This document shows positions 4,768 to 52,899 of a DNA stretch of 64,000 nt, in pieces (the stretch's first letter is position 1; every line of letters starts with the position of its first letter). The stretch covers positions 39,134,464 through 39,198,463 of the forward strand of contig NC_043011.1 in assembly GCF_006345805.1 (NCBI RefSeq), written 5' to 3'. The notes below the pieces were generated by a model. That model did not search any database. It saw only the letters and a program-made list of their open reading frames with translations, and had not been told where the DNA came from. The stretch is from Octopus sinensis. Lineage: Eukaryota. A program made the position numbers and the translations under genes.

Positions 4768-5886
4768 GTAAACCACCGCCTATTGCTTGTCAAGCTTCAA
4801 GCATATAGTTTCCATCCGGATATTGTACGATAGGTTGGTGCCTTGCTCTCAGATCGCTCCTTCCAAGTCCAAGTTAATGGTTCGCGGTCCGACGTCTCCA
4901 GTGCGAGCAGTGGCGTGCCTCAAGGTTCAGTGCTTGGGCCCTTGTTGTTCTTAGTCTTCATAAATGACTTGCCCGACAACCTCACGCAACACACCCTTCT
5001 ATTTGCCGACGATATCAAACTGGTCGCTCCTCGCAGTAATATAGAGGATCTTCGTCGATGCCTCCACCAAATTTGGAAGTGGTCTAACAATTGGGACCTG
5101 TGTCTGAACGTGTCAAAGTGCTGTCATCTGCCTGTCGGCTCTACTCCTGCAAATCAACTTGATTTCGAGCCGGGTCATCTGCTGCTGGAGAGGACCGATC
5201 AGGTAAAGGACCTAGGTATCTTGGTGGATTCCTCCTTTTCGCCTTCGGCCCAGTGCATCCATGCTGCCAACAAAGCACGGGGAATTCTGTTCTTGATTCG
5301 ACGGTCATTCGGAATGCTCACAGCAGCCATATTCCTACCACTCTATGTCACGCTGGTGAGACCCATATTGGAGTATGGGATTCAAGCCTCTTCTCCTTAT
5401 CTCCTCAAAGACATACAGCATCTCGAAAGAGTCCAGAAGCTGGCTACCCGCATGGTTCATGGTCTCAAAAATTTGTCCTATGAAGAAAGGCTGAGGATGC
5501 TCGACCTTTATTCTCTTGAAAAACGCAGCCACCGTGGTGATCTCATTCTCGCCCACAACATCATAAGCGGAAAGTGTAACCTCTCGAAAGAGCTGTTCTT
5601 CACTCCTGCTCCAGAGCGTCGGCTGCGGGGTCATTCCGAAAAGCTCTACCTGCGACGATTTCATCTCAATCGAAGGAGAGGAGCTTTCTCCGTCCGGGTT
5701 GCGGATCCGTGGAACAAGCTGCCAGACGAGATGGTGAAGATGCCGACGACCGCTTTGTTCAAAGCCTCCCTTGACCTCAAGTGGCCTGAACTCTTTACAT
5801 GAACACCACCCTGTACCTAACTCCATGTCCCCCTACATGGCCTTGCTATTTGCTTTTGAGCCAAATTAACTAACTAACTAACTAAC
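4768..5886 (+). mobile_element. 5'-truncated CR1-clade LINE: reverse transcriptase C-terminal half, 3' UTR stem-loop and (TAAC)5 tail
   Basis: In-frame VNHRLLLVKL from 4768, one TAG at 4831-4833, then the 319-aa ORF with SGVPQGSVLGPLLF, LFADD, LVRPILEYG, LERVQKLATR and RGH..L..RR motifs; stop at 5800-5802. Hairpin CCATGT-CCCCCT-ACATGG at 5823-5840; (TAAC)5 at 5867-5886. Confidence 0.95.
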
Positions 5887-9905: not shown

Positions 9906-10451
9906 ATAATGAATAGGGTAATGTGTTGTGGATTACGGTTACCATGTGACTCACAAGATTGTAATAGCTGTAAAAGATATTGGCATGTGGTGGGGTCATT
10001 GCGATATTAGTGTTGATTTGTCAGTGTGCTATATTTCACATGGATCATCTTTCACTCTTAGCCTTTGGTTTCCCCCTTCGATAAACTGGTAACCGCTACC
10101 CCACCAAGTATCACCTCTTCCTTCCTGTTCATTCTTTCCCTAGCTCAGCTTTATTTCTTTAGTACAGCACCCCCTACTTCTCTTAGAGCGGCACCCCCCT
10201 CTCGCCATCCTACTACGGTGTCACCCTATTATCTCTGTAATAGTTGTAATCAAACGTCACTGTTATACAAGCGGTGTTGTTTGCTTTTTGCCTTCTGTGA
10301 AAGTATGTCTACCATTGGTTGGTGGGTGGGATATTATCTATCTTGGAAACAAGTCAGGGTTGGTGAAGGGTGTCTGGCTATAGAAAACTGACCTCAATAA
10401 ATTCCATCTTACTCATCCATGCATGGGAAAGTGGACGTCAACCCATCTTAA

Positions 10452-10650
10452 CCCTGTCGAAATTTTGAAGACAGTTATATAACTAGGGATTACAACCATA
10501 CCAAAGCATCCAATTAACCTTTATTGCAGGAAATAGACCAAATACAATGGTTAAATAAATGCAAGCACTATTTTGCATCCAGTTAACCTTTATTTCAGTT
10601 AATGAACCAAATACAACTGTCCTCAAATGAGGACAGTGGGTTAATGTGGG
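10452..10650. mobile_element. piggyBac-like MITE, degenerate
   Basis: TTAA|CCCTGTC at 10448-10458 and GACAGTGGG|TTAA at 10632-10644 (second GGG|TTAA to 10654); internal ~69-bp direct repeat GCATCCA.TTAACCTTTATT. Confidence 0.5.
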
Positions 10651-10716
10651 TTAAAGCATGATAATGATGATGATTTTTCAATTATGATATCGTTGAAATT
10701 GATGAGTTTATTAAAA

Positions 10717-10754
10717 CTTAATTATTTTTGTTTTCTTCTTCCTTCTAGGTAAGT
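10717..10754 (+). other. Candidate recursive splice site (3' splice site abutting 5' splice site)
   Basis: Branch-like CTTAAT at 10717-10722, pyrimidine tract TTTTTGTTTTCTTCTTCCTTCT, AG at 10747-10748, GTAAGT at 10749-10754. Confidence 0.5.
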
Positions 10755-11374
10755 TACATCGATTCAGAATTGGAATGTTTGTTCTGTATAGTGTGGATCT
10801 TTTCATTCTTCGGTTCCTCCTCCAAAAATGATGCTCTTTAAACAGAAGATTTCAAAATATAAACCGACTTTGGCATATTTCTGTAAAAATGTATATTTAT
10901 TTTTTCACAAATGCCAATATGGAAATATTGTTGAAGGTATGTTAATATTTCTTCCAGAATCAATAAAGCATTATTGTGTTATTTTCTCGACACCCTGTTT
11001 GATCTCAATTTGAAATTTGTTGTGATTGAATTTGCCTTCCGGGATGGCTAATGGGGGCCTGATGAAATAAGTAGGCAAGTATAGTTAAGCACCTGCAAGC
11101 ATTTCTACAATTGCGTTTAGCTTTTGCAAAGGAAAAGATGAAGAGATGGGTTTTGTTACAATACCAGACTATTGGAAACATATTGAAATTTTTAAGTGTC
11201 AATAATAGTAGATTGATTAGAAATATTTATTTTTTCTCCTTTTCCTTTCTGTTAGGATATGCCATGTGTGTGAGTAAATATGTATATGCACACACACACT
11301 GGCTCTGTCTTCATCTCTTGTGTTGTCTTGTGTCATTGTTGACAACAACAGATGAAATAATAATAATTATAATT

Positions 11375-11508
11375 ATGGAGATGTACTTGCATAGCAAGTG
11401 ACTTGATCTGAGATCATATGTTGGAACGAAAGCAATCGCAGCATGGAAGGTGTTTATAAGCCATTTAAGAATCTTAAATGGCTTATAAACATCTTCCACG
11501 CTGCGATT
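11375..11508 (-). mobile_element. Fold-back insertion of an interspersed repeat (probable Penelope-like 3' end)
   Basis: Homologous to 31122-31292; 36-bp inverted arms at 11434-11469 and 11473-11508. Confidence 0.6.
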
Positions 11509-11514
11509 ATAATA

Positions 11515-12138
11515 ATAAGAAAAATCTTTTCTACTAAAAGCACAAGACCTGAAATTTTGGGGGTGGGGGGGTCTAGTCGATTATATTGACCTGAGTATGT
11601 AAGGATGAAAGTCAGAGTTGACCCCAATGGAATTTGAACTCAGAACGTAATGACAGACAAAATGCTACTGGGCACGACAGTAACGATTCTGCAGCTCACC
11701 GCCTTTAATAAAAATAATGATAATCCCTTCTACTAAAGGCACAAGGCTTGAAATTTGTGAGGAGGGACGTTGTTGATTACATTGACCCCAATGTTTCACT
11801 GGTACTTAATTTATTGACCCCCGAAAGGCAAAGTCGACACCGGCAGAATTTGAACTCAGAACGTAGCGACAGGCAAAATATTGCTAACCATTTCACCACC
11901 ACCTTAATAATAATAATAATAATGGTTCCAAATTTTGCCACAAGGGTAGCAATTTTGGGTGAGAGGATGTGTTGATTACATTGGCCCCAGTGTTTCATTG
12001 GTACTTAATTTACCGACCCCTAAAGAATAAAAAGCAAAGTTGACCTTGGCAGAAGTTGAACTCAGAACATAGCAACGGGCAAAATACTGCTAAGCATTTC
12101 ACCCAGCACGCTAACGATTTTACCAGCTTACTACCTTC

Positions 12139-12177
<39 letters not shown>

Positions 12178-12410
12178 GTAATAATAATAATAGCTTCAAA
12201 TTTTGCCACAAGGGCAACAGTTTTAGGGGAGGGAAAGAGTCGATTACATCGATCCCAGTTTTCAACAGGTACTTATTTTTATTGACCCCAAAAGGATGAA
12301 AGGCAAAGTCAACCGTGGCAGAATTTGAACTCAAAACAAATCGATAAGCAAAATCCTGCTAAGCATTTTGTCAAGCATGCTAACGATTCTACCAGCTTAC
12401 CGCCTTCTTA
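11515..12410 (-). mobile_element. Head-to-tail array of four family B SINEs separated by (AAT)n
   Basis: Repeated GAAATTT...GATTACATTGACCCC...GAATTTGAACTCAGAACG...GCTAACGATT...CCGCC units; a fifth copy lies at about 12720-12860. Confidence 0.85.
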
Positions 12411-13809
12411 ATAATGATTAAAAATAATGATAACGATAATTAGATAAGATCTCAGGAGGACCATGTCTCAGAGAAATCCAAAAGATTGTACTGACAAGTA
12501 CTGCCCTATATCCTTAGAAAGACCCTATCCATTTAAATGTCTCTGTTGTATTACTTGAAGATACTTCGCTACTACCCCTGCCACTTCCCCTCCCCAAGCT
12601 TTCAGTCATACTACAATATCTCTTATCCTTCACTCGCCCTAGGACACTGGGTGTGTCTCGGCAAGTGATTGTAACAAACATGCAGATTAAAAATAAATAA
12701 TAATAATAATAATAATAATAATAATCCTTTCTACTGAAGGCACAAGACCTGAAATTTTCAGGTTGGGGTTAGTCTATTATATTGACCCCAGTTTATAAGG
12801 ATGAAAGGCAAAATTGATCCCAACAGAATTTGAACTGAGAACATAAAGACAAGACAAAATGCATATATTCATGCGCGTGCATGCACATACACACACACAC
12901 ACAAGTATGGCTGTGTGGTTGAGAACTTCCTTCCTCAACTGTTTTCTACTAACTTATGGGGATGTAAACAAACCAACACCATTTGTCAAGTAGTTGGGGT
13001 GATAAAAACAGATACACAAGGATACCCCTTCACACACACATGCACACATATGATGGGCTTCTTTTCAGTTTCCAGCTACCAAATTCACTCATAAGGCTTT
13101 AGTGAAAAATAGAAATATATTTGGCCGAGGTGCCATGCAGTGAGACTGAACCCAGAACCATATGGATTGGAAGCAAACTTCTTACCACACAGCCACGCCT
13201 CTGCATCTTTTTTTTTCTTTTTTTCTTTTTTTCTTTTTGTATTATTTATGGAAAACTTGTAATATGAGGGTCAGAGAAATATAAAAGAATTTTCTCTGAA
13301 CAAAAAAAAAATGTCTGAGAGGGCAGGGCTACTTACTATACAGTTGTAACATTAACCATTTGACCCTTTTCCTCTCCCCACCCCCATGTACTCCCCTCAT
13401 CATTTATCTATCAATTTAACCTTTTCCTAAGGGCACAAAGAGAACTACTGAACCTTTCTTGGAATGCCTCTTTAATTACCTTCTGCTTTTCATAGAGGAA
13501 ATTTTTATGAAAATATGAGTGGTTGTGGGGTTTGGATGAGTGTTTTGACCTTTCTGTGTTGTTACAATTCCGTTTTGTTTTGTGTGTGCCTGTTTACATT
13601 TATATATTTTTGTTTCTGCGAAGAAGGTGAAGGCGTGGGTGGATGTTTGCAGAGTACTCTGACCTTTAGTCTTTTTTTAAGGGCCAGGCTCATTCATGAG
13701 TGATATCCTAATTAGCATATGTATATTGCATTTGGTGTATATGTTGGTATATGTCACTGTGTATGTGTTTTTAAATGCATGTGTATATATATATATATAT
13801 GAGTTGTGG

Positions 13810-19320: not shown

Positions 19321-19754
19321 ATAATAATAAACATTGTGTACAGTGCTCAGGTGCACTACAACTCATCTAAAGTGCATATATAATCAGGTGTAGTTTCGAC
19401 GGATTTCGGAAAGCATGAGGCCTTAAAGGATGCAGTGTCATGGCAGTCAACAACTGACGCAGGCAGTTTATTCCATGCTTCAGCAACTCTGAGCGTGAAG
19501 AAATGTTTCCGAAAGTCATGGGAGCTGTGTTGTTTTCTGACTTTGTAAGCATGTCCACGTGTGTTAGACACATGGAGATCAAAAAGGTGTTCAGTGTTGT
19601 TATTGGTGAGGTGGTTGACAACTTTGTGGGTGTTTACCAAGTCCGTCGCCAGACGCCGGAGCTTCAGTGAATCCATGCCCAGGGAAACAAGGCGCTCAGA
19701 ATATGGTAGGTGTCTGATGGAGGGTATGCGTTTGGTTGCACGTCTCTGAACCGA
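19321..19754 (-). mobile_element. 5'-truncated CR1-clade LINE 3' end (second family)
   Basis: Minus strand translates SVQRRATKRIPSIRHLPYSERLVSLGMDSLKLRR...TRGHAYKVRK...FFTLRVAEAWNKLP. 3' hairpin AGTGC-ACCTGA-GCACT and (TAT)n tail; inserted in a (TA)n tract. Confidence 0.9.
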
Positions 19755-29299: not shown

Positions 29300-29847
29300 C
29301 ACCGAAAAAAAAGTTAGTGGTGTTTGTTTGGTGGTCCAGCACTGGTGTCCTTCATTTCATGAGACCCAGTAAGTCAATTACAATGAATGTATACATCAAT
29401 TGGATAAAATGATGTGTGAACTTGCAATTAAACAATCGAGATTGGTCAATAGAGACAGGCCAATTCTCTTGCAAGACAATGCTCGACCACATGTTGCACA
29501 AAGAATGCTGCTCATGTTACAGGAACTGAACTTGGAAGTACTCTTTCATCCTCCATATTCACTTGAGCTTGCACCAACTGACTATCAGGTTTTCTGGGCA
29601 TTAGACAACTTTTTGCAAGCGAAAAATTTCAAACCTGAAGAAGATGCAAAACAGCCTTTTGTGATTTCATCATCTATTACTCTCCAGAATACTTCACTGC
29701 TGACATAAATAAGCTACCGATAAAATGGCAAAATTGTATTGATAATTTAGATGCATTACTTTGATTAACTGCATTGCTTTTTGTTGAAATAAAATAAAAT
29801 AAACTTTCAGTTCAAAAATCAGGCATTTCATTCTTAATGACCTGATA
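29300..29847 (+). pseudogene. Mariner transposase C-terminal relic with right TIR
   Basis: KKLVVFVWWSSTGVLHF and LLQDNARPHVA...HPPYSLELAPTDY (DNARPH and YSPDLAPSD-type DD34D motifs), frameshifted; ends ...CTTAATGACCTGATA then TA. Confidence 0.9.
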
Positions 29848-31121
29848 TATTTACATCAATCCTTTAAAAAAAAAAAAAAAAGTTTCATTTATGTATGTTT
29901 CTGTTTTGTAACATTCGCAATCTAACAATTAGACACTAATAAAAATAAATTAGATATCATTAACCGAACTTCCTAGAAAACCTTCAAAGCTGAGTTGGTA
30001 ATCGTTCATCATACTCAAGTTTTCTCCTACTCTGTTTCTTGTGTACTCTTGGTATATTTGTTTTTGTCTCAAGCATGGTTGTGTGCTAAGTAGGTTTCTT
30101 CCTATATGTATGGTTTCAGGTTTAGCTCCACTGTGTGGCACCTTGGCCAAATGTCTTCTACTTAGCCCTGGGCTGACCAGAACCTCTGAGTGAATTTGAT
30201 GGACAGAAACTGACAGAAGCCCATTGTGTGTGTGTGTGTGTGTCTGTGTCTGTGTGTGTGTTTGTGTCTTCTTGCTTTGGCATCATGTGGCTGTTATAAA
30301 TGAATGTCATTCATTTCCAATATCCTGCCCAAACATGTCTGACCAGAGGGAAATATTACCTTCCGTTGACAGAAATAAAGTTTGGCAAGAAAGAAAAGAG
30401 AAAAAAAAAAACCCAACCACAGAAACTAAAATCTTTCTTAATAAGTATTCATCTGACCCATGCAGGCAAGGAAAAGTGGACATTAAAATGACGATGATTT
30501 ATTCTCCATTTTCTTCTGACAATAGAAGCTGTGCTTGTTGAGATGTTTGCTTAATGAATGAGCTGAAGGTTAATTTACTTGCGTTAGCTGTTAACTTTTT
30601 AACTGGGTTATTATTTTTTTTTCCGTCATTGTACATACACAATCTCATTATTAATTAAGGGAAGAAAGAAGGATGGCTTGATTGGATTGAATTAACTGCA
30701 AATTTGCATAGGATTGTTTAAATAATTAATGTGTAATATATGCGCAAATTAAACCATGTTTCAGGTGATCATGTCAGTGTAAGCAAACTGTAATAAAAAA
30801 AAAAATATATCATTATCATACTGGTATTGTGGAATTTCATCCACCTTGGCAGTAATTCAGTTAGTGAATGAGTCTGTAAGGGTCTCGCAATATGGTTGGC
30901 CAACTTGCTAGAAATAGCAACCAAATAGTCTTTATTAGATGCTGTCACTTTAAAGTAGAGGAGGAATGCAGTTTGTAATGTGGACCTACATACATTATGG
31001 TTTGAAAAAGAAAGTAATGATTTGGTTGTTACAGTTGGAATGTTAAAGAATTGTTGAATATATTCCTGGGTCATTTGTCTGTTGATGTCTCACACATCTG
31101 ACCAATTCATATATATATATT

Positions 31122-31292
31122 ATGGAGATGTGCTTGCATAGCAAGTGACTTGATCTGAGATCACGTGCTGGAACGAAAACAATTGCAGCGTGGAAGGTGT
31201 TTATAAGCCATTAAGAAACACACAAAAACCATTAGATTCACTTCAACATTGAAATTTAATTTGCCAAAATATTTTTGTTGCTTTGAGACCGC
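31122..31292 (-). mobile_element. Longer copy of the repeat at 11375
   Basis: ATGGAGATGT.CTTGCATAGCAAGTGACTTGATCTGAGATC...GGAAGGTGTTTATAAGCCATT shared with 11375-11469. Confidence 0.75.
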
Positions 31293-40747: not shown

Positions 40748-41110
40748 TATATATTCCATTCATCAGTTTTTCAACATACATGCCAGGACCAGCTTACCCT
40801 TATCTGTGCTAATTTTCAGCCAGCTTTTTTACCCTGACCACTTAAAAAAAATGGAACTAGGTTCCCCAGTCAGCAGGATGTTTACCTCAGACAGTTAGTC
40901 TCTTTAGATGCAGTCCTTTTATATTTCTCATGTTTCATGTTTTTCTGTTTGCATGGGTTAGAGGAATATAGAACCATTGATAAGGCATTGAGCTGGCAGA
41001 AATGTTGCATGCTGGGCTTAATGGTATTAGTGGTATTTCATCTGTCTTTACGTTCTGAGTTCAAATTCCACCAAGGTCGACTTTGTCTTTCGTCCTTTCG
41101 AGGTTGATGA

Positions 41111-41431
41111 ATTAAGTACTAGTTGCATCCTGAAGTCGATCTAATCGAATGGCCACCTCCCCTAAAATTTCAGGCCTTGTGCCTAGAGTAGAAAAGATTA
41201 CTATAGAACCTTTGATTTACATCTGGTTGGGCTTCTTTCACTGACCTTTCTTGCTTTGCATTTAAGGGATAAATTAAGTACTAGTTGTATCCTGAGGTCG
41301 ATCTAATCGAATGGCCCCCTCCCCCAAAATTTCAGGCCTTGTGCCTAGAGTAGGAAAGATTACTATAGAACCTTTGATTTACATCTGGTTGGCCTTCTTT
41401 CACTGACCCTTCTTGTTTTGCATTTAAGGGA
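41111..41431. repeat. Tandem duplication, 162-bp period (SINE B tail plus flank)
   Basis: ATTAAGTACTAGTTG at 41111 and 41273; the copies differ by several substitutions. Confidence 0.9.
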
Positions 41432-43258: not shown

Positions 43259-43399
43259 ATGCACGCATGCGCAAGTGTATTTACCTGTAATGTATTTGTG
43301 TGTCTACCTGTCTTTGGACTTGTAGATGATTATGATGGTAGTAAAAGCAAAGCCAAAAAAAAAAAGGTCCATTGTCAAATTGCATTTAAGTACTGAAAA

Positions 43400-44158
43400 A
43401 AATAACCAAAAAAAAAATTCTGTTCCCCCTCCTCCCCAGAATTCCACAAAAAAACTTGTTTTTCCTCATATTCTAGTTATTTCATTTTATGTATATATTT
43501 TTTCATCCCTGCCATTTTTTTCTCTTTTTTTTCCCCCCCCCCAATTTCTTCACCTCACCCCTAATTCATTCATTCTCTCTTCTGCATCACCTGTAAGCTT
43601 AGTCTTCCATTTTTTGTCATTTCATTCTCTATTTTGTTATATTTTAATTTCATTTTATATATATTTTTTTTTTATTTATTACCATTTTTGCATCAACCAG
43701 CAGCAGTGAAATCCCTATCCTTGTGATAGACATTTCCTATATAGCTTTTACAACAGCCTTCATAACCCCTTGACCCCCTTCTGTCTCATCTTGTAATGAT
43801 CCCCCCCTCCACCTTCCTTCCTTCTTTCCTTCTGTCCTTCCTCAGCATGTGGTGTGTATGTAACTGAAACATTTCACTTGCAGAACCTTTTGCTCTCTCC
43901 TCCTCATCCTTCCATAACCCATCTTTTCATTCTTCCCCTCATCCCCCTCAGCTTTCTGTGCCTCTCACTCTTTCTCCCCCTTACTGTCTCTGTTTCTCCC
44001 TTTGTCTCTGTATACCTGTTTGTATCTATCTCCTTTTGTGTCTGTCCCTCTCCCTTTCGCTCCCACACTCACTCTCTCTCTCTCTCTCACTGCCCCCTCT
44101 CTCTCCTCTGTTCTGTTTTTCTGTCCTGTATATCTTTCTTTCTAATCTCCTGTCTCTG

Positions 44159-44191
<33 letters not shown>

Positions 44192-44760
44192 TCTGTTTCT
44201 CCCCCTCTGATCAGTTTCCCTATCTGTCCTCTCTCTCTCCATCCTCTCCCTGTTTCTCTGTCTCTCTCTGCCAGCTCTCAGTCCCCCCTCTCTCTGTCCC
44301 CTTTCTCTCTGCCACCTCTCTCTATGCCCTATTTCTCTCTGCCCCTATTATGTCACTCTATCCTTTCTAGTCTCTACTCTTCTAATTCTTCTTTCTTTTC
44401 CTTCATTTCCTTCCTTCCTTCCTAACAGCTCACTCTCTACATTTGTATTCCATTTCTAAATGCTTCTCTGCTAATTCTTCCTGGAATACCCTCCAAACCT
44501 TTTGTAATCCTTTCGTACCCCATTTTTTCTCTTTTATTTCTCTCTTCATTTTCTTCCCCTTTAACCTTCCTTCTCATTCCTTCCCCAATCCTTCACTCTC
44601 CACAACCTCCTCACCCCTTCACCAATTTCTCTATGTCCCCCCACCCGAGATATGTCCTTCACAAGCCCCCCTCCACATACAAACAGGACTCTCCCCCACC
44701 CCACTGAAAACCTCACTCATCTCCCGCATAAACCTCACTTAATTGTGCTTATGATAAACG
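43400..44760 (+). repeat. Long pyrimidine-biased (CT-rich) low-complexity tract
   Basis: Directly visible; followed by an ACC/CAC-rich tract at about 44800-45270. Confidence 0.9.
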
Positions 44761-45599
44761 ACCTATATGCATGCAGAAACCTACACGGACTCCAAGGAAG
44801 GGTGGCACAACCACCACTATCACTACTGCTACCCATACTATCTTGACAACCATCAGCCACAACCAACACCACTAGTGCCACTCACTGCCACCACCACCTC
44901 CAGTATTCACTGCCAAAACTTATCGCCACACCTACCACATACCATCAGCAGTCATAGCTATCAATGCAACGCAACCACCTCAACCACCACCATCGCTGCT
45001 ACTGTTCACCAAAGCTATGACCACAACATGACAACCACCACACAACATCCGCAGTGTCATCACCATGACCACTGTCCAACATTCACCAGCAAAAAAACTA
45101 TCGCCAGAATATGACTATGGTAACTATTATTACTAGCACCAGCACCACCACCACCAAAACTATCTCTACCACTCACCATCCTTTGCCAAAACTAACACAA
45201 TCACTACCACTAGCGCCACCCCCCCCACTGTCATCATCACTATGACCACCGTCACTATCATCACTACCGCCACCACCCTGATTGAGAACTATGACCTTTG
45301 CAATGACGCAGTGAGGACTACCGTTATGTGGTCTTTCAGCCTTTTACAAATAGTAGCCAGAATCCCTCCTCACAACAGCCCTGAAATTATTCCCCACTGC
45401 TTTTTAGAAGTACAGATAAAACTGGTAAATGCTGGAAAAAGAGGAGTAATGGCCACGGATGGAATGCTTTTAATTGTAGGTCTCTCTGGATTTGACTTGA
45501 TCTGGGTATAATCACCACTGTTGCTGCTGCTACTACTACTACCATCACTATTACCACTACTATCATTAATTATTACCAGTTCTGCTGCTAATAATAATA

Positions 45600-48225: not shown

Positions 48226-48264
48226 CTGTAATACTGTTTTTTTTTCTTTCTATTTCAGGTGAGT
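48226..48264 (+). other. Candidate recursive splice site
   Basis: GTAAT branch-like motif at 48228-48232, pyrimidine tract T9-CTTTCTATTTC, AG at 48257-48258, GTGAGT at 48259-48264. Confidence 0.45.
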
Positions 48265-48804
48265 TATATATATATTTTTTTTTTACATCTAATTTGTTTT
48301 ACCTCTGGATTCCGTTTCCTGTCTGTCTGTCATACCGACAACAAGAATTGGAATGATGCAAAGATGGGAATAAGAGTCTGACAGAGTGAAAAGAAACGAG
48401 ACAAAAGGATTAACTACAATGGAAACGGTTTTCAGGAAGGAATTCTAGCAGTGATTCTAAGATTCTAAGATGACAAAATCACAAACAATACTTCCCTCCC
48501 CCCCACCAAAAAATAAAAAAGAAAGCATAGTAAAACAAACACAACCAATATTGGAATATTGTTCAAACATCAAGGCGACAAAGTATGTTTCTTTTTTGTA
48601 TTTATTTTTGTATTATTAGCAAGGTAAGCAATTTAGCTGGGAATATTCTACATTAGGTTATTTTCTTAAGAGATATGTGTGTGTGTAAGTATTTGTGTAT
48701 GTGTATATATATATGTGTGCATGCATGTGTGGGTAGTTGTGTGTATGTGCATATATGTATGTGTATGTCCATATATGTATATGTATGTGAATATGTATGA
48801 TGTA

Positions 48805-51908: not shown

Positions 51909-52899
51909 CTAGATATCTTTCAGTTTGTTTACCAGATCCACTGACAAAGCTTTGGTTGGTCCTAGTCTATACAAGACACTTGAGCAGGGTGCCATATAGT
52001 GAGCATGAACCTGGAATCATGCGACTGAAAAGCAGACTTCTTACCATGCAGCTACTTGTGTACCTATGTCGAACAGCTTTTAAATGCTACTCCCTTTTTA
52101 TCATTTAATCTAGTTTCACTCATTCACTTTACTCACCCCAACCCCATTCACCCACTTCCACTTCATTCGTCACAGGTATGTTATCACCTTACAATTTCTT
52201 GATTTAAATTCTGATTTAAATTAGTCCCCTGCAAATTTAATCAATCTTATCTTACAATCTAATTCCATTTTGACTCCCTTCTTCCTTCTGCTCCTCCCGC
52301 TTGTCTACCGTCTCCCTGTCTCCTCTGTCCTTGTAGGCACTTTATCACTCCCTAGGTATTTCTTTGATATTAAATCTTACAACTAGATTTAACGCAGATT
52401 TACCCAGTTCGTTTAGTGCAAATTATTTCCAGTACAAAGGCGATTAATCCCTTTACGTTAATTTAATACAATTTGTTTTTCCATTCCGTTTTAATGAGAC
52501 ATTTAAGCACACTCTTCACTTTACCTGTTAACTATGTAATATTATTCATTCCTCCTTGTTTCCCTCTCATTTTAAAACACATCACATTAAAGTATTAACT
52601 TTAGCATTTCGCTTTAATTGCTGTTATCCAGAACAGTTAACACGCTCATGCAGGGTTGCGTGGTAAAAAAAATTTGCATGCCAACTGCATGGATTCTCAC
52701 TACGTGGTACTTAGGGTGAGTGTCTCACACTGTAGCCCAGGGTCAACTAGTGCCTTGTGAGTGCATTTGGTAGACAGAAATTGGAAGAAGCCTGTCATGC
52801 GTGCACATGCATGTGTGTGTGTGTGTGTGTATGTATCATCATCATCGTCATCATCATTGTTGTTTAACGTCTGCTTTCTGTGCTGATATGGGTTGGACA

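What the first reader, a model, noticed from the sequence alone, without database searches (positions are those of the whole stretch)
10717..10942. Recursive-splice-like site with a downstream poison RS-exon
Seen: branch-like CTTAAT, a ~25-nt pyrimidine tract, then TAG|GTAAGT, a perfect 5' splice site directly after a strong 3' splice site. A second strong donor, GAAG|GTATGT, lies at 10937. The 188-nt segment 10749-10936 has stops in all three incoming frames. Established: zero-length ratchet points (Drosophila) and PTC-containing RS-exons (vertebrate long neuronal genes) have this layout. Inference: the window lies inside a very long plus-strand intron removed in steps, which I do not know to be described for cephalopods. 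Alternative: an ordinary exon carrying an ATG at 10828.
Basis: partly seen in the sequence, partly recalled or inferred. Interest (0 to 1): 0.7.

Follow-up and report, generated by a model that had tools for sequence, protein, structure and literature searches.

The report
Paired recursive-splice-like sites, plus strand
The flagged acceptor-plus-donor splice motif is real, and a second, unrelated copy of the same design lies 37.5 kb downstream on the same strand, so stepwise ("recursive") removal of a very long intron is the best reading, though no RNA or cross-species evidence could be obtained.

Summary
Site A alone would be weak evidence. The 8-mer AGGTRAGT occurs about as often as chance predicts. 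The "stops in all frames" and "downstream donor" details are uninformative.

A second site changes the picture. Site B at 48258|48259 reads tttttttttctttctatttcag|GTGAGT, on the same strand. The window has only two AGGTRAGT copies, and both follow 19/20 pyrimidines, a property of 0.62% of plus-strand positions. Given site A, the chance of a second such site is about 0.004-0.015. A and B share no flanking homology. Both have TT at -6/-5, a branch-like A at -28, and a weaker donor downstream.

No host coding exon was detected in the 64 kb; only transposon fragments were found. T exceeds A on the plus strand in 14-16 of 16 bins, as on the coding strand of introns.

Best reading (about 0.5): A and B are ratchet points of one long plus-strand intron, each with a skipped cryptic exon. 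I could not test transcription, junction reads, conservation, gene identity or the cephalopod origin. If real, this is a new member of a known kind.

The parts
10717..10722 (+). Site A branch-point-like CTTAAT (TTAAT fits yUnAy; candidate branch A at 10721, position -28)
   Evidence: The distance lies within the -36..-21 range reported for fly ratchet-point branch points. The motif is degenerate and was not tested.
10725..10748 (+). Site A pyrimidine tract (19/20 Y before the AG, TT at -6/-5) and 3' splice site TAG
   Evidence: Acceptor PWM score is 13.9; only 11 of 3169 plus-strand AGs score as high.
10749..10754 (+). Site A regenerated 5' splice site GTAAGT, immediately after the AG (candidate ratchet point, boundary 10748|10749)
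   Evidence: Donor score is 10.4.
10749..10936 (+). Candidate cryptic RS-exon A: 188 nt, length not a multiple of 3, stops in all frames
   Evidence: The stop content is uninformative, since 78% of random segments have it. No protein relative was found for its ORF.
10937..10942 (+). RS-exon A donor GAAG|GTATGT, weaker than the ratchet-point donor (8.9 vs 10.4)
   Evidence: It is the first donor-like site scoring >=3 downstream of the ratchet point.
48228..48232 (+). Site B branch-point-like GTAAT (candidate branch A at 48231, position -28)
   Evidence: Degenerate motif; inference only.
48237..48258 (+). Site B pyrimidine tract (19/20 Y, TT at -6/-5) and 3' splice site CAG
   Evidence: Acceptor score is 14.2.
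48259..48264 (+). Site B regenerated 5' splice site GTGAGT (candidate ratchet point, boundary 48258|48259)
   Evidence: Donor score is 13.35.
48259..48623 (+). Candidate cryptic RS-exon B: 365 nt, stops in all frames, ending at donor CAAG|GTAAGC (48624; score 11.0, below 13.35)
   Evidence: The assignment is weak, because such pairs are common by chance.
52156..52181 (+). Weaker third juxtaposed site C, cacag|GTATGT (boundary 52175|52176). It has 15/20 Y, TC at -6/-5 and no good downstream donor.
   Evidence: It is not significant on its own: about 0.4 sites per strand are expected at its thresholds.

Best explanation
Sites A (10748|10749) and B (48258|48259) are recursive splice sites (ratchet points) inside one very long intron of a plus-strand gene. 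The gene's exons lie outside, or undetected within, this window.

1. As the intron is transcribed, the strong acceptor at A is recognised together with the downstream donor at 10937. This is exon definition of a 188-nt cryptic RS-exon.
2. The upstream exon is spliced to 10749, which removes the first intron segment as a lariat. The likely branch point is near 10721.
3. This places the upstream exon directly before GTAAGT, regenerating a strong 5' splice site.
4. That site out-competes the weaker GTATGT donor, so the cryptic exon is removed with the next segment.
5. The same cycle repeats at B, 37.5 kb further on, and possibly at the weaker site C.
6. If the cryptic exon were retained, it would shift the frame and introduce stops.
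For: Shown by sequence and statistics:
- The motif is present exactly as described.
- Only two AGGTRAGT copies exist in the window. Both are on the plus strand and both follow 19/20 pyrimidines, a property of 0.62% of plus-strand and 0.12% of minus-strand positions.
- 2 of the 8 best acceptor-like AGs are followed by GTRAGT, against 0.004 expected.
- Shuffles that preserve local composition expect about 0.003 such sites per strand; 2 were observed.
- A tool scan gave 2 matches against 0.15 expected.
- No comparable site exists on the minus strand.
- A and B are not copies of one another, and each lies in sequence that is unique within the window.

Agreement with published ratchet-point features (Duff et al.; Joseph et al.):
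- TT at -6/-5 in both sites. The base rate among pyrimidine-rich AGs here is 28%.
- A branch-like A at -28 in both.
- The A-to-B spacing of 37.5 kb falls within the 2.6-63.6 kb range of fly segments.
- The ratchet-point donor is stronger than the RS-exon donor at both sites.

Context:
- Pfam matched no host-gene family in 487 ORFs of >=45 aa; only RT and mariner fragments were found.
- T>A on the plus strand is seen in 16/16 bins after masking simple repeats and 14/16 bins in unique sequence (S_TA +0.048, about 6.9 sd). C is slightly above G. These are the signs reported for the coding strand of Drosophila introns.
Against: - No RNA evidence of any kind, no annotation and no orthologous sequence could be obtained.
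- The source organism is unverified.
- The independent statistical support rests on one extra site, with P about 0.004-0.015. The PWM came from my own recollection of human-like frequencies.
- The candidate RS-exons (188 and 365 nt) are longer than the ~50 nt typical of flies. Pseudo-exon pairs of this quality are equally common on both strands.
- Site A has TAG rather than the preferred CAG.
- Donor-like motifs are somewhat more frequent on the minus strand, 64 vs 45.
- Strand skew can also arise from replication.
- Extrapolating the chance rate seen in this window to a genome of gigabase size implies hundreds of chance sites. That is my inference, since the genome size is unknown.
Confidence: 0.5

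Rival explanations
1. Chance pseudo-sites. A and B are non-functional coincidences of T-rich tracts with AGGTRAGT in AT-rich, low-complexity-laden DNA, whether intronic or intergenic. Nothing is spliced there.
For: - The 8-mer is not enriched: 2 observed against about 4.4 expected.
- T-rich and CT-rich tracts are common on this strand.
- B sits between a T run and a (TA)n(T)n run.
- Pseudo-exons abound on both strands.
- No transcript or conservation evidence exists.
Against: - Both of the only two AGGTRAGT copies carry a 19/20 pyrimidine tract. The joint probability is about 4e-5, and the conditional probability for the second is 0.004-0.015.
- Shuffles within 60-nt blocks, which keep local composition, still expect about 0.003.
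- Both sites are on the same strand, both have TT at -6/-5, and both have an A at -28.
Confidence: 0.25
2. Ordinary included exon(s). 10749-10936 (and perhaps 48259-48623) are real cassette, UTR or non-coding-RNA exons that appear in mature transcripts. This includes the reader's alternative of a first coding exon starting at ATG 10828. The initial GTRAGT is then either incidental or makes them 'expressed RS-exons'.
For: - A strong acceptor and a donor at exon-like spacing.
- ATG 10828 has an A at -3 and is open for 36 codons up to the donor.
- Another top-class acceptor lies at 11256, 319 nt after the donor, which resembles a short intron.
- Expressed exons that begin with a 5' splice site are known in flies and humans.
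Against: - No protein in a 5.8-billion-cluster database shares even three 5-residue words with the ORF. Coverage of the source organism is unproven, however.
- Stops occur in all frames, and the length is not a multiple of 3.
- Two unrelated exons both starting with GTRAGT would be about a 1-in-2000 event each unless recursion is involved.
Confidence: 0.13
3. Plain 5' splice site. 10749 is simply the donor of an upstream exon that ends at 10748. One candidate is a short first coding exon from ATG 10702 (MSLLKLNYFCFLLPS, signal-peptide-like). The pyrimidine tract would then be exonic and incidental.
For: - GTAAGT after TAG is a good donor.
- A 15-codon ORF from ATG 10702 runs into the junction (read).
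Against: - The ORF is too short to test.
- Only 0.3% of AG positions carry such a tract, and the same coincidence would have to recur at B.
- No homologue or promoter evidence was found.
Confidence: 0.05
4. Repeat-derived motif. The sites belong to old transposable-element or other repeated sequence that happens to carry a T tract followed by AGGTRAGT. Copies elsewhere in the genome are invisible from a single window.
For: - About half of the window is repeat.
- Both sites are bracketed by SINE-like and MITE-like elements.
- A shared 12-mer, AGAATTGGAATG, lies downstream of both.
Against: - Neither site matches anything else in the window.
- A and B do not align beyond the motif. The best local score is 30, within the shuffle range.
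- There is no Rfam match, including no U1-like gene on the minus strand.
Confidence: 0.05

Closest known systems
Drosophila intronic ratchet points with cryptic RS-exons (Hatton 1998; Burnette 2005; Duff 2015, read as bioRxiv 10.1101/006163; Joseph 2018 and 2021, PMC8605326; Pai 2018, PMC6110457)
   Same: - Juxtaposed strong 3' and 5' splice sites around AG|GT.
- An unusually prominent pyrimidine tract with TT at -6/-5.
- A branch-like A about 28 nt upstream.
- More than one site on one strand, tens of kb apart.
- A downstream donor weaker than the regenerated one.
- An out-of-frame, stop-rich cryptic exon.
   Different: - Candidate cryptic exons are 188 and 365 nt, against about 50 nt in flies.
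- Site A has TAG rather than CAG.
- Junction reads, sawtooth coverage, lariats and deep conservation, the features that actually define fly ratchet points, are untested here.
- The organism is different and unverified.
Vertebrate recursive splice sites with RS-exons in long neuronal genes (Sibley et al. 2015, from my own knowledge; Blazquez et al. 2018, PMC6224609, abstract only)
   Same: - An RS-exon of ordinary exon size, defined by its own donor.
- Inclusion would introduce premature stops.
- Setting in a very large, repeat-rich intron.
   Different: - Gene length, neuronal expression and conservation are unknown.
- Vertebrate sites were defined from RNA data, which is lacking here.
Pseudo-exons and decoy splice sites in long introns (e.g. 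the DMD pseudo-exon review PMC7175933, title and abstract only)
   Same: Acceptor/donor pairs with stop-filled content occur throughout this window on both strands (16 vs 15 pairs).
   Different: Ordinary pseudo-exons do not begin with a consensus GTRAGT directly after a top-0.3% acceptor. Here that happens twice.

Membership tests
Recursive splice site / ratchet point (fly type) | Juxtaposed 3' splice site and 5' splice site, (Y)nNYAG|GTRAGT | tested here: met
   Site A is ttcttcttccttctag|GTAAGT and site B is ttctttctatttcag|GTGAGT. PWM acceptor/donor scores are 13.9/10.4 for A and 14.2/13.35 for B.
Recursive splice site / ratchet point (fly type) | TT at positions -6/-5, found in 99.5% of fly ratchet points | tested here: met
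   A and B both have TT; C has TC. The base rate among pyrimidine-rich AGs in this window is 28%.
Recursive splice site / ratchet point (fly type) | Location inside a long intron (>11 kb in flies), in the sense orientation | tested here: inconclusive
   No host-gene Pfam match in 487 ORFs. T>A on the plus strand holds in 14-16 of 16 bins, the sign seen on the coding strand of introns. No annotation or flanking exons were found.
Recursive splice site / ratchet point (fly type) | Junction reads from the upstream exon to the site, sawtooth read density, and lariats to and from the site | not testable with these tools
Recursive splice site / ratchet point (fly type) | Sharp evolutionary conservation of the AG|GT core relative to its flanks | not testable with these tools
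   Attempts to reach orthologous DNA failed: the metagenome pattern scan gave 0 hits, protein-word searches of flanking ORFs gave 0 hits, and exact look-ups gave 0 of 10.
Recursive splice site / ratchet point (fly type) | Cryptic RS-exon with a downstream donor weaker than the regenerated donor | tested here: met
   A: 8.9 vs 10.4 at 188 nt. B: 11.0 vs 13.35 at 365 nt. This is weakly informative, because pseudo-exon pairs are common. The exon lengths exceed the fly norm of ~50 nt.
Vertebrate RS-exon (poison if included) | RS-exon carries premature stops or shifts the frame | tested here: met
   Stops occur in all three frames and 188 mod 3 = 2. However, 78% of random 188-nt segments have stops in all frames, so this does not discriminate.
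Vertebrate RS-exon (poison if included) | Host gene is very long and expressed in the nervous system | not testable with these tools
   The gene was not identified.
Ordinary protein-coding exon (ATG 10828) | The encoded peptide occurs in a predicted or known protein | tested here: not met
   No candidate shared three 5-residue words with the 73-aa ORF, and the exact 61-aa ORF is absent from the collection. Caveat: no close relative of the window's own LINE RT was found either (best 50% identity), so coverage of the source organism is doubtful.
Known structured RNA (e.g. a U1-like gene on the minus strand, since ACTTACCT equals the U1 5' end) | Match to an Rfam covariance model | tested here: not met
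   There were 0 matches at gathering score across the window. Only chance-level hits appeared in 10200-11500.

The most novel reading that the evidence does not exclude
Fly-style constitutive recursive splicing operates in a cephalopod (lophotrochozoan) giant intron, with several ratchet points per intron and skipped cryptic exons. Stepwise intron removal would then be either ancestral to bilaterians or recruited repeatedly wherever introns become very large.
Probability: 0.4. Interest if true: 0.6.

Novelty: new member of a known kind. Interest (0 to 1): 0.5.

Why it matters
Recursive splicing has been documented from RNA data in insects and vertebrates. The searchable library holds no report for octopus, and only incidental co-mentions for cephalopods or molluscs.

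Cephalopod genomes are, from my own knowledge, repeat-rich with very long neuronal genes. They are therefore a natural place to ask whether long-intron processing by ratchet points is a general bilaterian solution.

This window offers two concrete, testable coordinates on one strand: 10748|10749 and 48258|48259. It also suggests a simple genome-wide predictor, namely AGGTRAGT preceded by >=19/20 pyrimidines and occurring in same-strand clusters. If RNA data confirm the sites, the result extends a known mechanism to a new phylum. It is not a new mechanism.

Tried and rejected
1. Coding exon test. The 73-aa ORF across the candidate exon, and five neighbouring ORFs, found nothing in the large protein database. 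Ten window ORFs were absent by exact look-up.
2. Orthologue hunt by DNA pattern in metagenome contigs gave 0 hits. No collection at hand appears to hold the source organism.
3. Host-gene search. Pfam on all 487 stop-to-stop ORFs of >=45 aa with adequate complexity found only RVT_1 and mariner transposase fragments, plus chance-level hits.
4. Taxon check through the LINE RT. The best relative had 50% identity, the hits were CR1-like from birds, turtles and flukes, and none was named as a cephalopod. The cephalopod origin is therefore unverified.
5. U1-like or other RNA gene on the minus strand: rejected by Rfam.
6. A and B as copies of one element: rejected. The best local alignment lies within the shuffle range, and k-mer sharing is mostly T-rich low complexity.
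7. Downstream donor and 'poison' content as evidence: rejected as uninformative.
8. PAS hexamer depletion on the plus strand (51 vs 85): fully explained by the A/T skew, so it adds nothing.
9. A candidate open pseudo-exon at 2620-2784 turned out to be SINE-like sequence.

Full report
**1. The observation**

Reading the plus strand confirms every element at the stated coordinates:
- CTTAAT at 10717-10722.
- A pyrimidine tract at 10725-10746, with 19 of the 20 bases before the AG being pyrimidines.
- TAG|GTAAGT with the junction at 10748|10749.
- GAAG|GTATGT with the junction at 10936|10937.
- Stops in all three frames of the 188-nt segment between the two junctions.
- An ATG at 10828 that is open for 36 codons plus one base up to the second donor.

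**2. Which details carry information**

Several do not.
- The 8-mer AGGTRAGT occurs twice in the window. The tool's dinucleotide shuffles expect 4.4 on both strands.
- Stops in all three frames are found in 78% of random 188-nt plus-strand segments.
- Acceptor/donor pairs of exon-like spacing and comparable scores are equally frequent on the two strands, 16 and 15. A donor 188 nt downstream says little.

What is rare is the full juxtaposition.
- With a simple position-weight scoring (frequencies from my own recollection of metazoan consensus), site A scores 13.9 as an acceptor and 10.4 as a donor. Only 11 of 3169 plus-strand AGs and 12 of 4197 GTs score that high.

**3. A second site**

The same scan returned a second plus-strand site that meets both of site A's thresholds: ctgtaatactgtttttttttctttctatttcag|GTGAGTTAT, at 48258|48259.
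- It also returned a weaker third site at 52175|52176, cacag|GTATGT.
- Nothing comparable lies on the minus strand.
- Shuffles that preserve dinucleotides within blocks of 64 kb, 1 kb, 200 nt or 60 nt expect 0-0.003 such sites per strand; two were observed.

Measures that do not depend on the PWM agree.
- Both of the window's only two AGGTRAGT copies are preceded by 19/20 pyrimidines. This holds for 0.62% of plus-strand and 0.12% of minus-strand positions.
- Only 8 plus-strand AGs have such a tract, and 2 of them are followed by GTRAGT. That hexamer has an empirical frequency of 30 in 64,000, so 0.004 were expected.
- YYYYYYYYNYAGGTRAGT with one mismatch allowed gives 2 matches against 0.15 expected.

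Site A was picked by eye, so the fair test is the second site. Its chance probability is about 0.004-0.015, depending on how it is computed. Site C is not significant alone, since about 0.4 per strand are expected at its level.

**4. Independence and context**

- A and B are not copies of one element. The best local alignment of their surroundings scores within the shuffle range, and shared k-mers are mostly T-rich.
- Each site lies in sequence with no other match in the window, between SINE-like repeats.
- A curiosity: the 12-mer AGAATTGGAATG occurs only twice in the window, 17 nt after A and 85 nt after B. I cannot explain it, and it may be chance.
- No Rfam family matches. This excludes, for example, a U1-like gene on the minus strand, where the motif reads ACTTACCT.

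**5. Agreement with published ratchet-point anatomy**

Duff et al. report the following for fly ratchet points:
- A more prominent pyrimidine tract than ordinary introns.
- TT at -6/-5 in 99.5% of sites.
- Branch points at -36 to -21.
- Host introns of 11-133 kb.
- One to six sites per intron.
- Segments of 2.6-63.6 kb.

Here:
- A and B both have TT at -6/-5, against a base rate of 28% among pyrimidine-rich AGs in this window.
- Both have a branch-like TAAT with the A at -28.
- They are 37.5 kb apart.

Joseph et al. show that the ratchet point needs a short cryptic exon, whose donor loses to the stronger regenerated donor.
- At both sites the first good downstream donor is weaker: 8.9 vs 10.4 for A and 11.0 vs 13.35 for B.
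- The implied exons, 188 and 365 nt, are longer than the fly norm of about 50 nt and closer to the vertebrate pattern.

**6. Is the window a plus-strand intron?**

- Pfam scans of all 487 stop-to-stop ORFs of at least 45 residues found only transposon fragments and chance-level hits. The fragments were a LINE reverse transcriptase at 4834-5799, a second RT fragment in the last quarter of the window, and a mariner-type transposase at 29373-29705. Nothing contradicts an intronic location, but intergenic DNA would look the same.
- Base composition adds a hint. T exceeds A on the plus strand in 16 of 16 4-kb bins after masking simple repeats.
- In the 33.6 kb that is unique within the window, T exceeds A in 14 of 16 bins (S_TA +0.048; 10,697 T against 9,713 A). 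C is slightly above G.
- These are the signs reported for the coding strand of Drosophila introns. From my own knowledge, T>A also holds for human introns.
- Replication-related skew cannot be excluded.

**7. What could not be done**

- No RNA data, annotation or orthologous DNA could be reached.
- The ORF across the candidate exon and five neighbouring ORFs have no relatives in the large protein database. Ten window ORFs are absent by exact look-up. A DNA pattern scan of metagenome contigs found nothing.
- The window's own LINE RT finds nothing closer than 50% identity, and no hit is named as a cephalopod. The cephalopod origin is therefore unverified. It also means the negative protein searches are weak evidence against a coding exon.
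- The composition (37.6% G+C), the dense (TA)n and (CA)n arrays and the SINE load fit my recollection of octopus genomes. That is a lead, not a test.

**8. Interpretation**

The best-supported reading is that A and B are ratchet points of one long plus-strand intron. Each would be used through a cryptic exon that is then skipped, because the regenerated GTRAGT beats the downstream donor. I put this at about 0.5.

The rivals are:
- Chance pseudo-sites, 0.25.
- Ordinary included exons, including the ATG-10828 idea, 0.13.
- A plain donor of an upstream exon, for example a 15-codon ORF from ATG 10702, 0.05.
- A repeat-derived motif, 0.05.

The mechanism is entirely inferred from anatomy and from the fly and vertebrate literature. 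None of its steps was observed.

**9. Novelty and value**

- The searchable library has no paper linking recursive splicing with octopus. It holds only incidental co-mentions with cephalopods or molluscs.
- If confirmed, this would extend a known mechanism to a new phylum: a new member of a known kind.
- The practical gain is two exact junction coordinates to look for in total RNA-seq, plus a same-strand clustering criterion that could be applied genome-wide.

Noticed in passing
window 48228-48629 (+): A second juxtaposed 3'/5' splice-site motif, tttttttttctttctatttcag|GTGAGT, at 48258|48259. A donor CAAG|GTAAGC lies 365 nt downstream. It was not part of the finding as given and became the main supporting evidence.
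   Followed up: yes
window 52156-52181 (+): A third, weaker juxtaposed site, cacag|GTATGT, with 15/20 pyrimidines, TC at -6/-5 and no good downstream donor. It is not significant alone.
   Followed up: partly
window 10766-10777 and 48344-48355 (+): The 12-mer AGAATTGGAATG occurs only twice in the window, 17 nt and 85 nt downstream of sites A and B. The surrounding sequence is not homologous. It could be chance or a shared exonic element.
   Followed up: partly
window 11234-11261 (+): Another top-class acceptor-like site, ttctccttttcctttctgttag|GATATG (19/20 Y), lies 319 nt after the 10937 donor. The arrangement resembles a short intron following the candidate exon.
   Followed up: no
window 48588-48629 (+): An acceptor-like T-rich tract ending in ...gtattattag lies just 4 nt (CAAG) before the strong donor GTAAGC at 48624. 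This is a near-juxtaposed pair at the end of candidate exon B.
   Followed up: no
window 10506-10616 and 11434-11508: A 69-nt-period tandem duplication (42-nt cores, 86% identical) lies upstream of site A. Downstream is a 37-nt-arm near-perfect palindrome (95%), part of a repeat also present at 31114-31217 (91%). It gives sub-threshold mir-548-like Rfam hits on both strands (E 0.004-0.018). Both look like MITE-type elements.
   Followed up: partly
window 4834-5799 (+), 29373-29705 (+), 19359-19754 (-): Transposon coding remnants. One is a LINE reverse transcriptase (RVT_1 7.7e-14) whose closest database relative has only 50% identity, with CR1-like hits. One is a mariner-type transposase fragment. 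A possible LINE C-terminal fragment lies on the minus strand. A further RVT_1 fragment somewhere in 47.7-64 kb was not located.
   Followed up: partly
whole window: A consistent excess of T over A on the plus strand: S_TA +0.04 to +0.055, in 14-16 of 16 4-kb bins, and also in unique sequence. G/C skew is near zero or slightly C-rich. This is compatible with transcription of the plus strand across all 64 kb.
   Followed up: yes
window 43300-45100 (+): A CT-rich low-complexity block (GC skew about -0.44) contains three of the eight best acceptor-like AGs on the plus strand. It inflates naive counts of polypyrimidine tracts.
   Followed up: no
window 11911-12440 and 41106-41431: Tandem duplications of SINE-like units: period 269 nt at 79% identity, and period 162 nt at 94% identity.
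   Followed up: no
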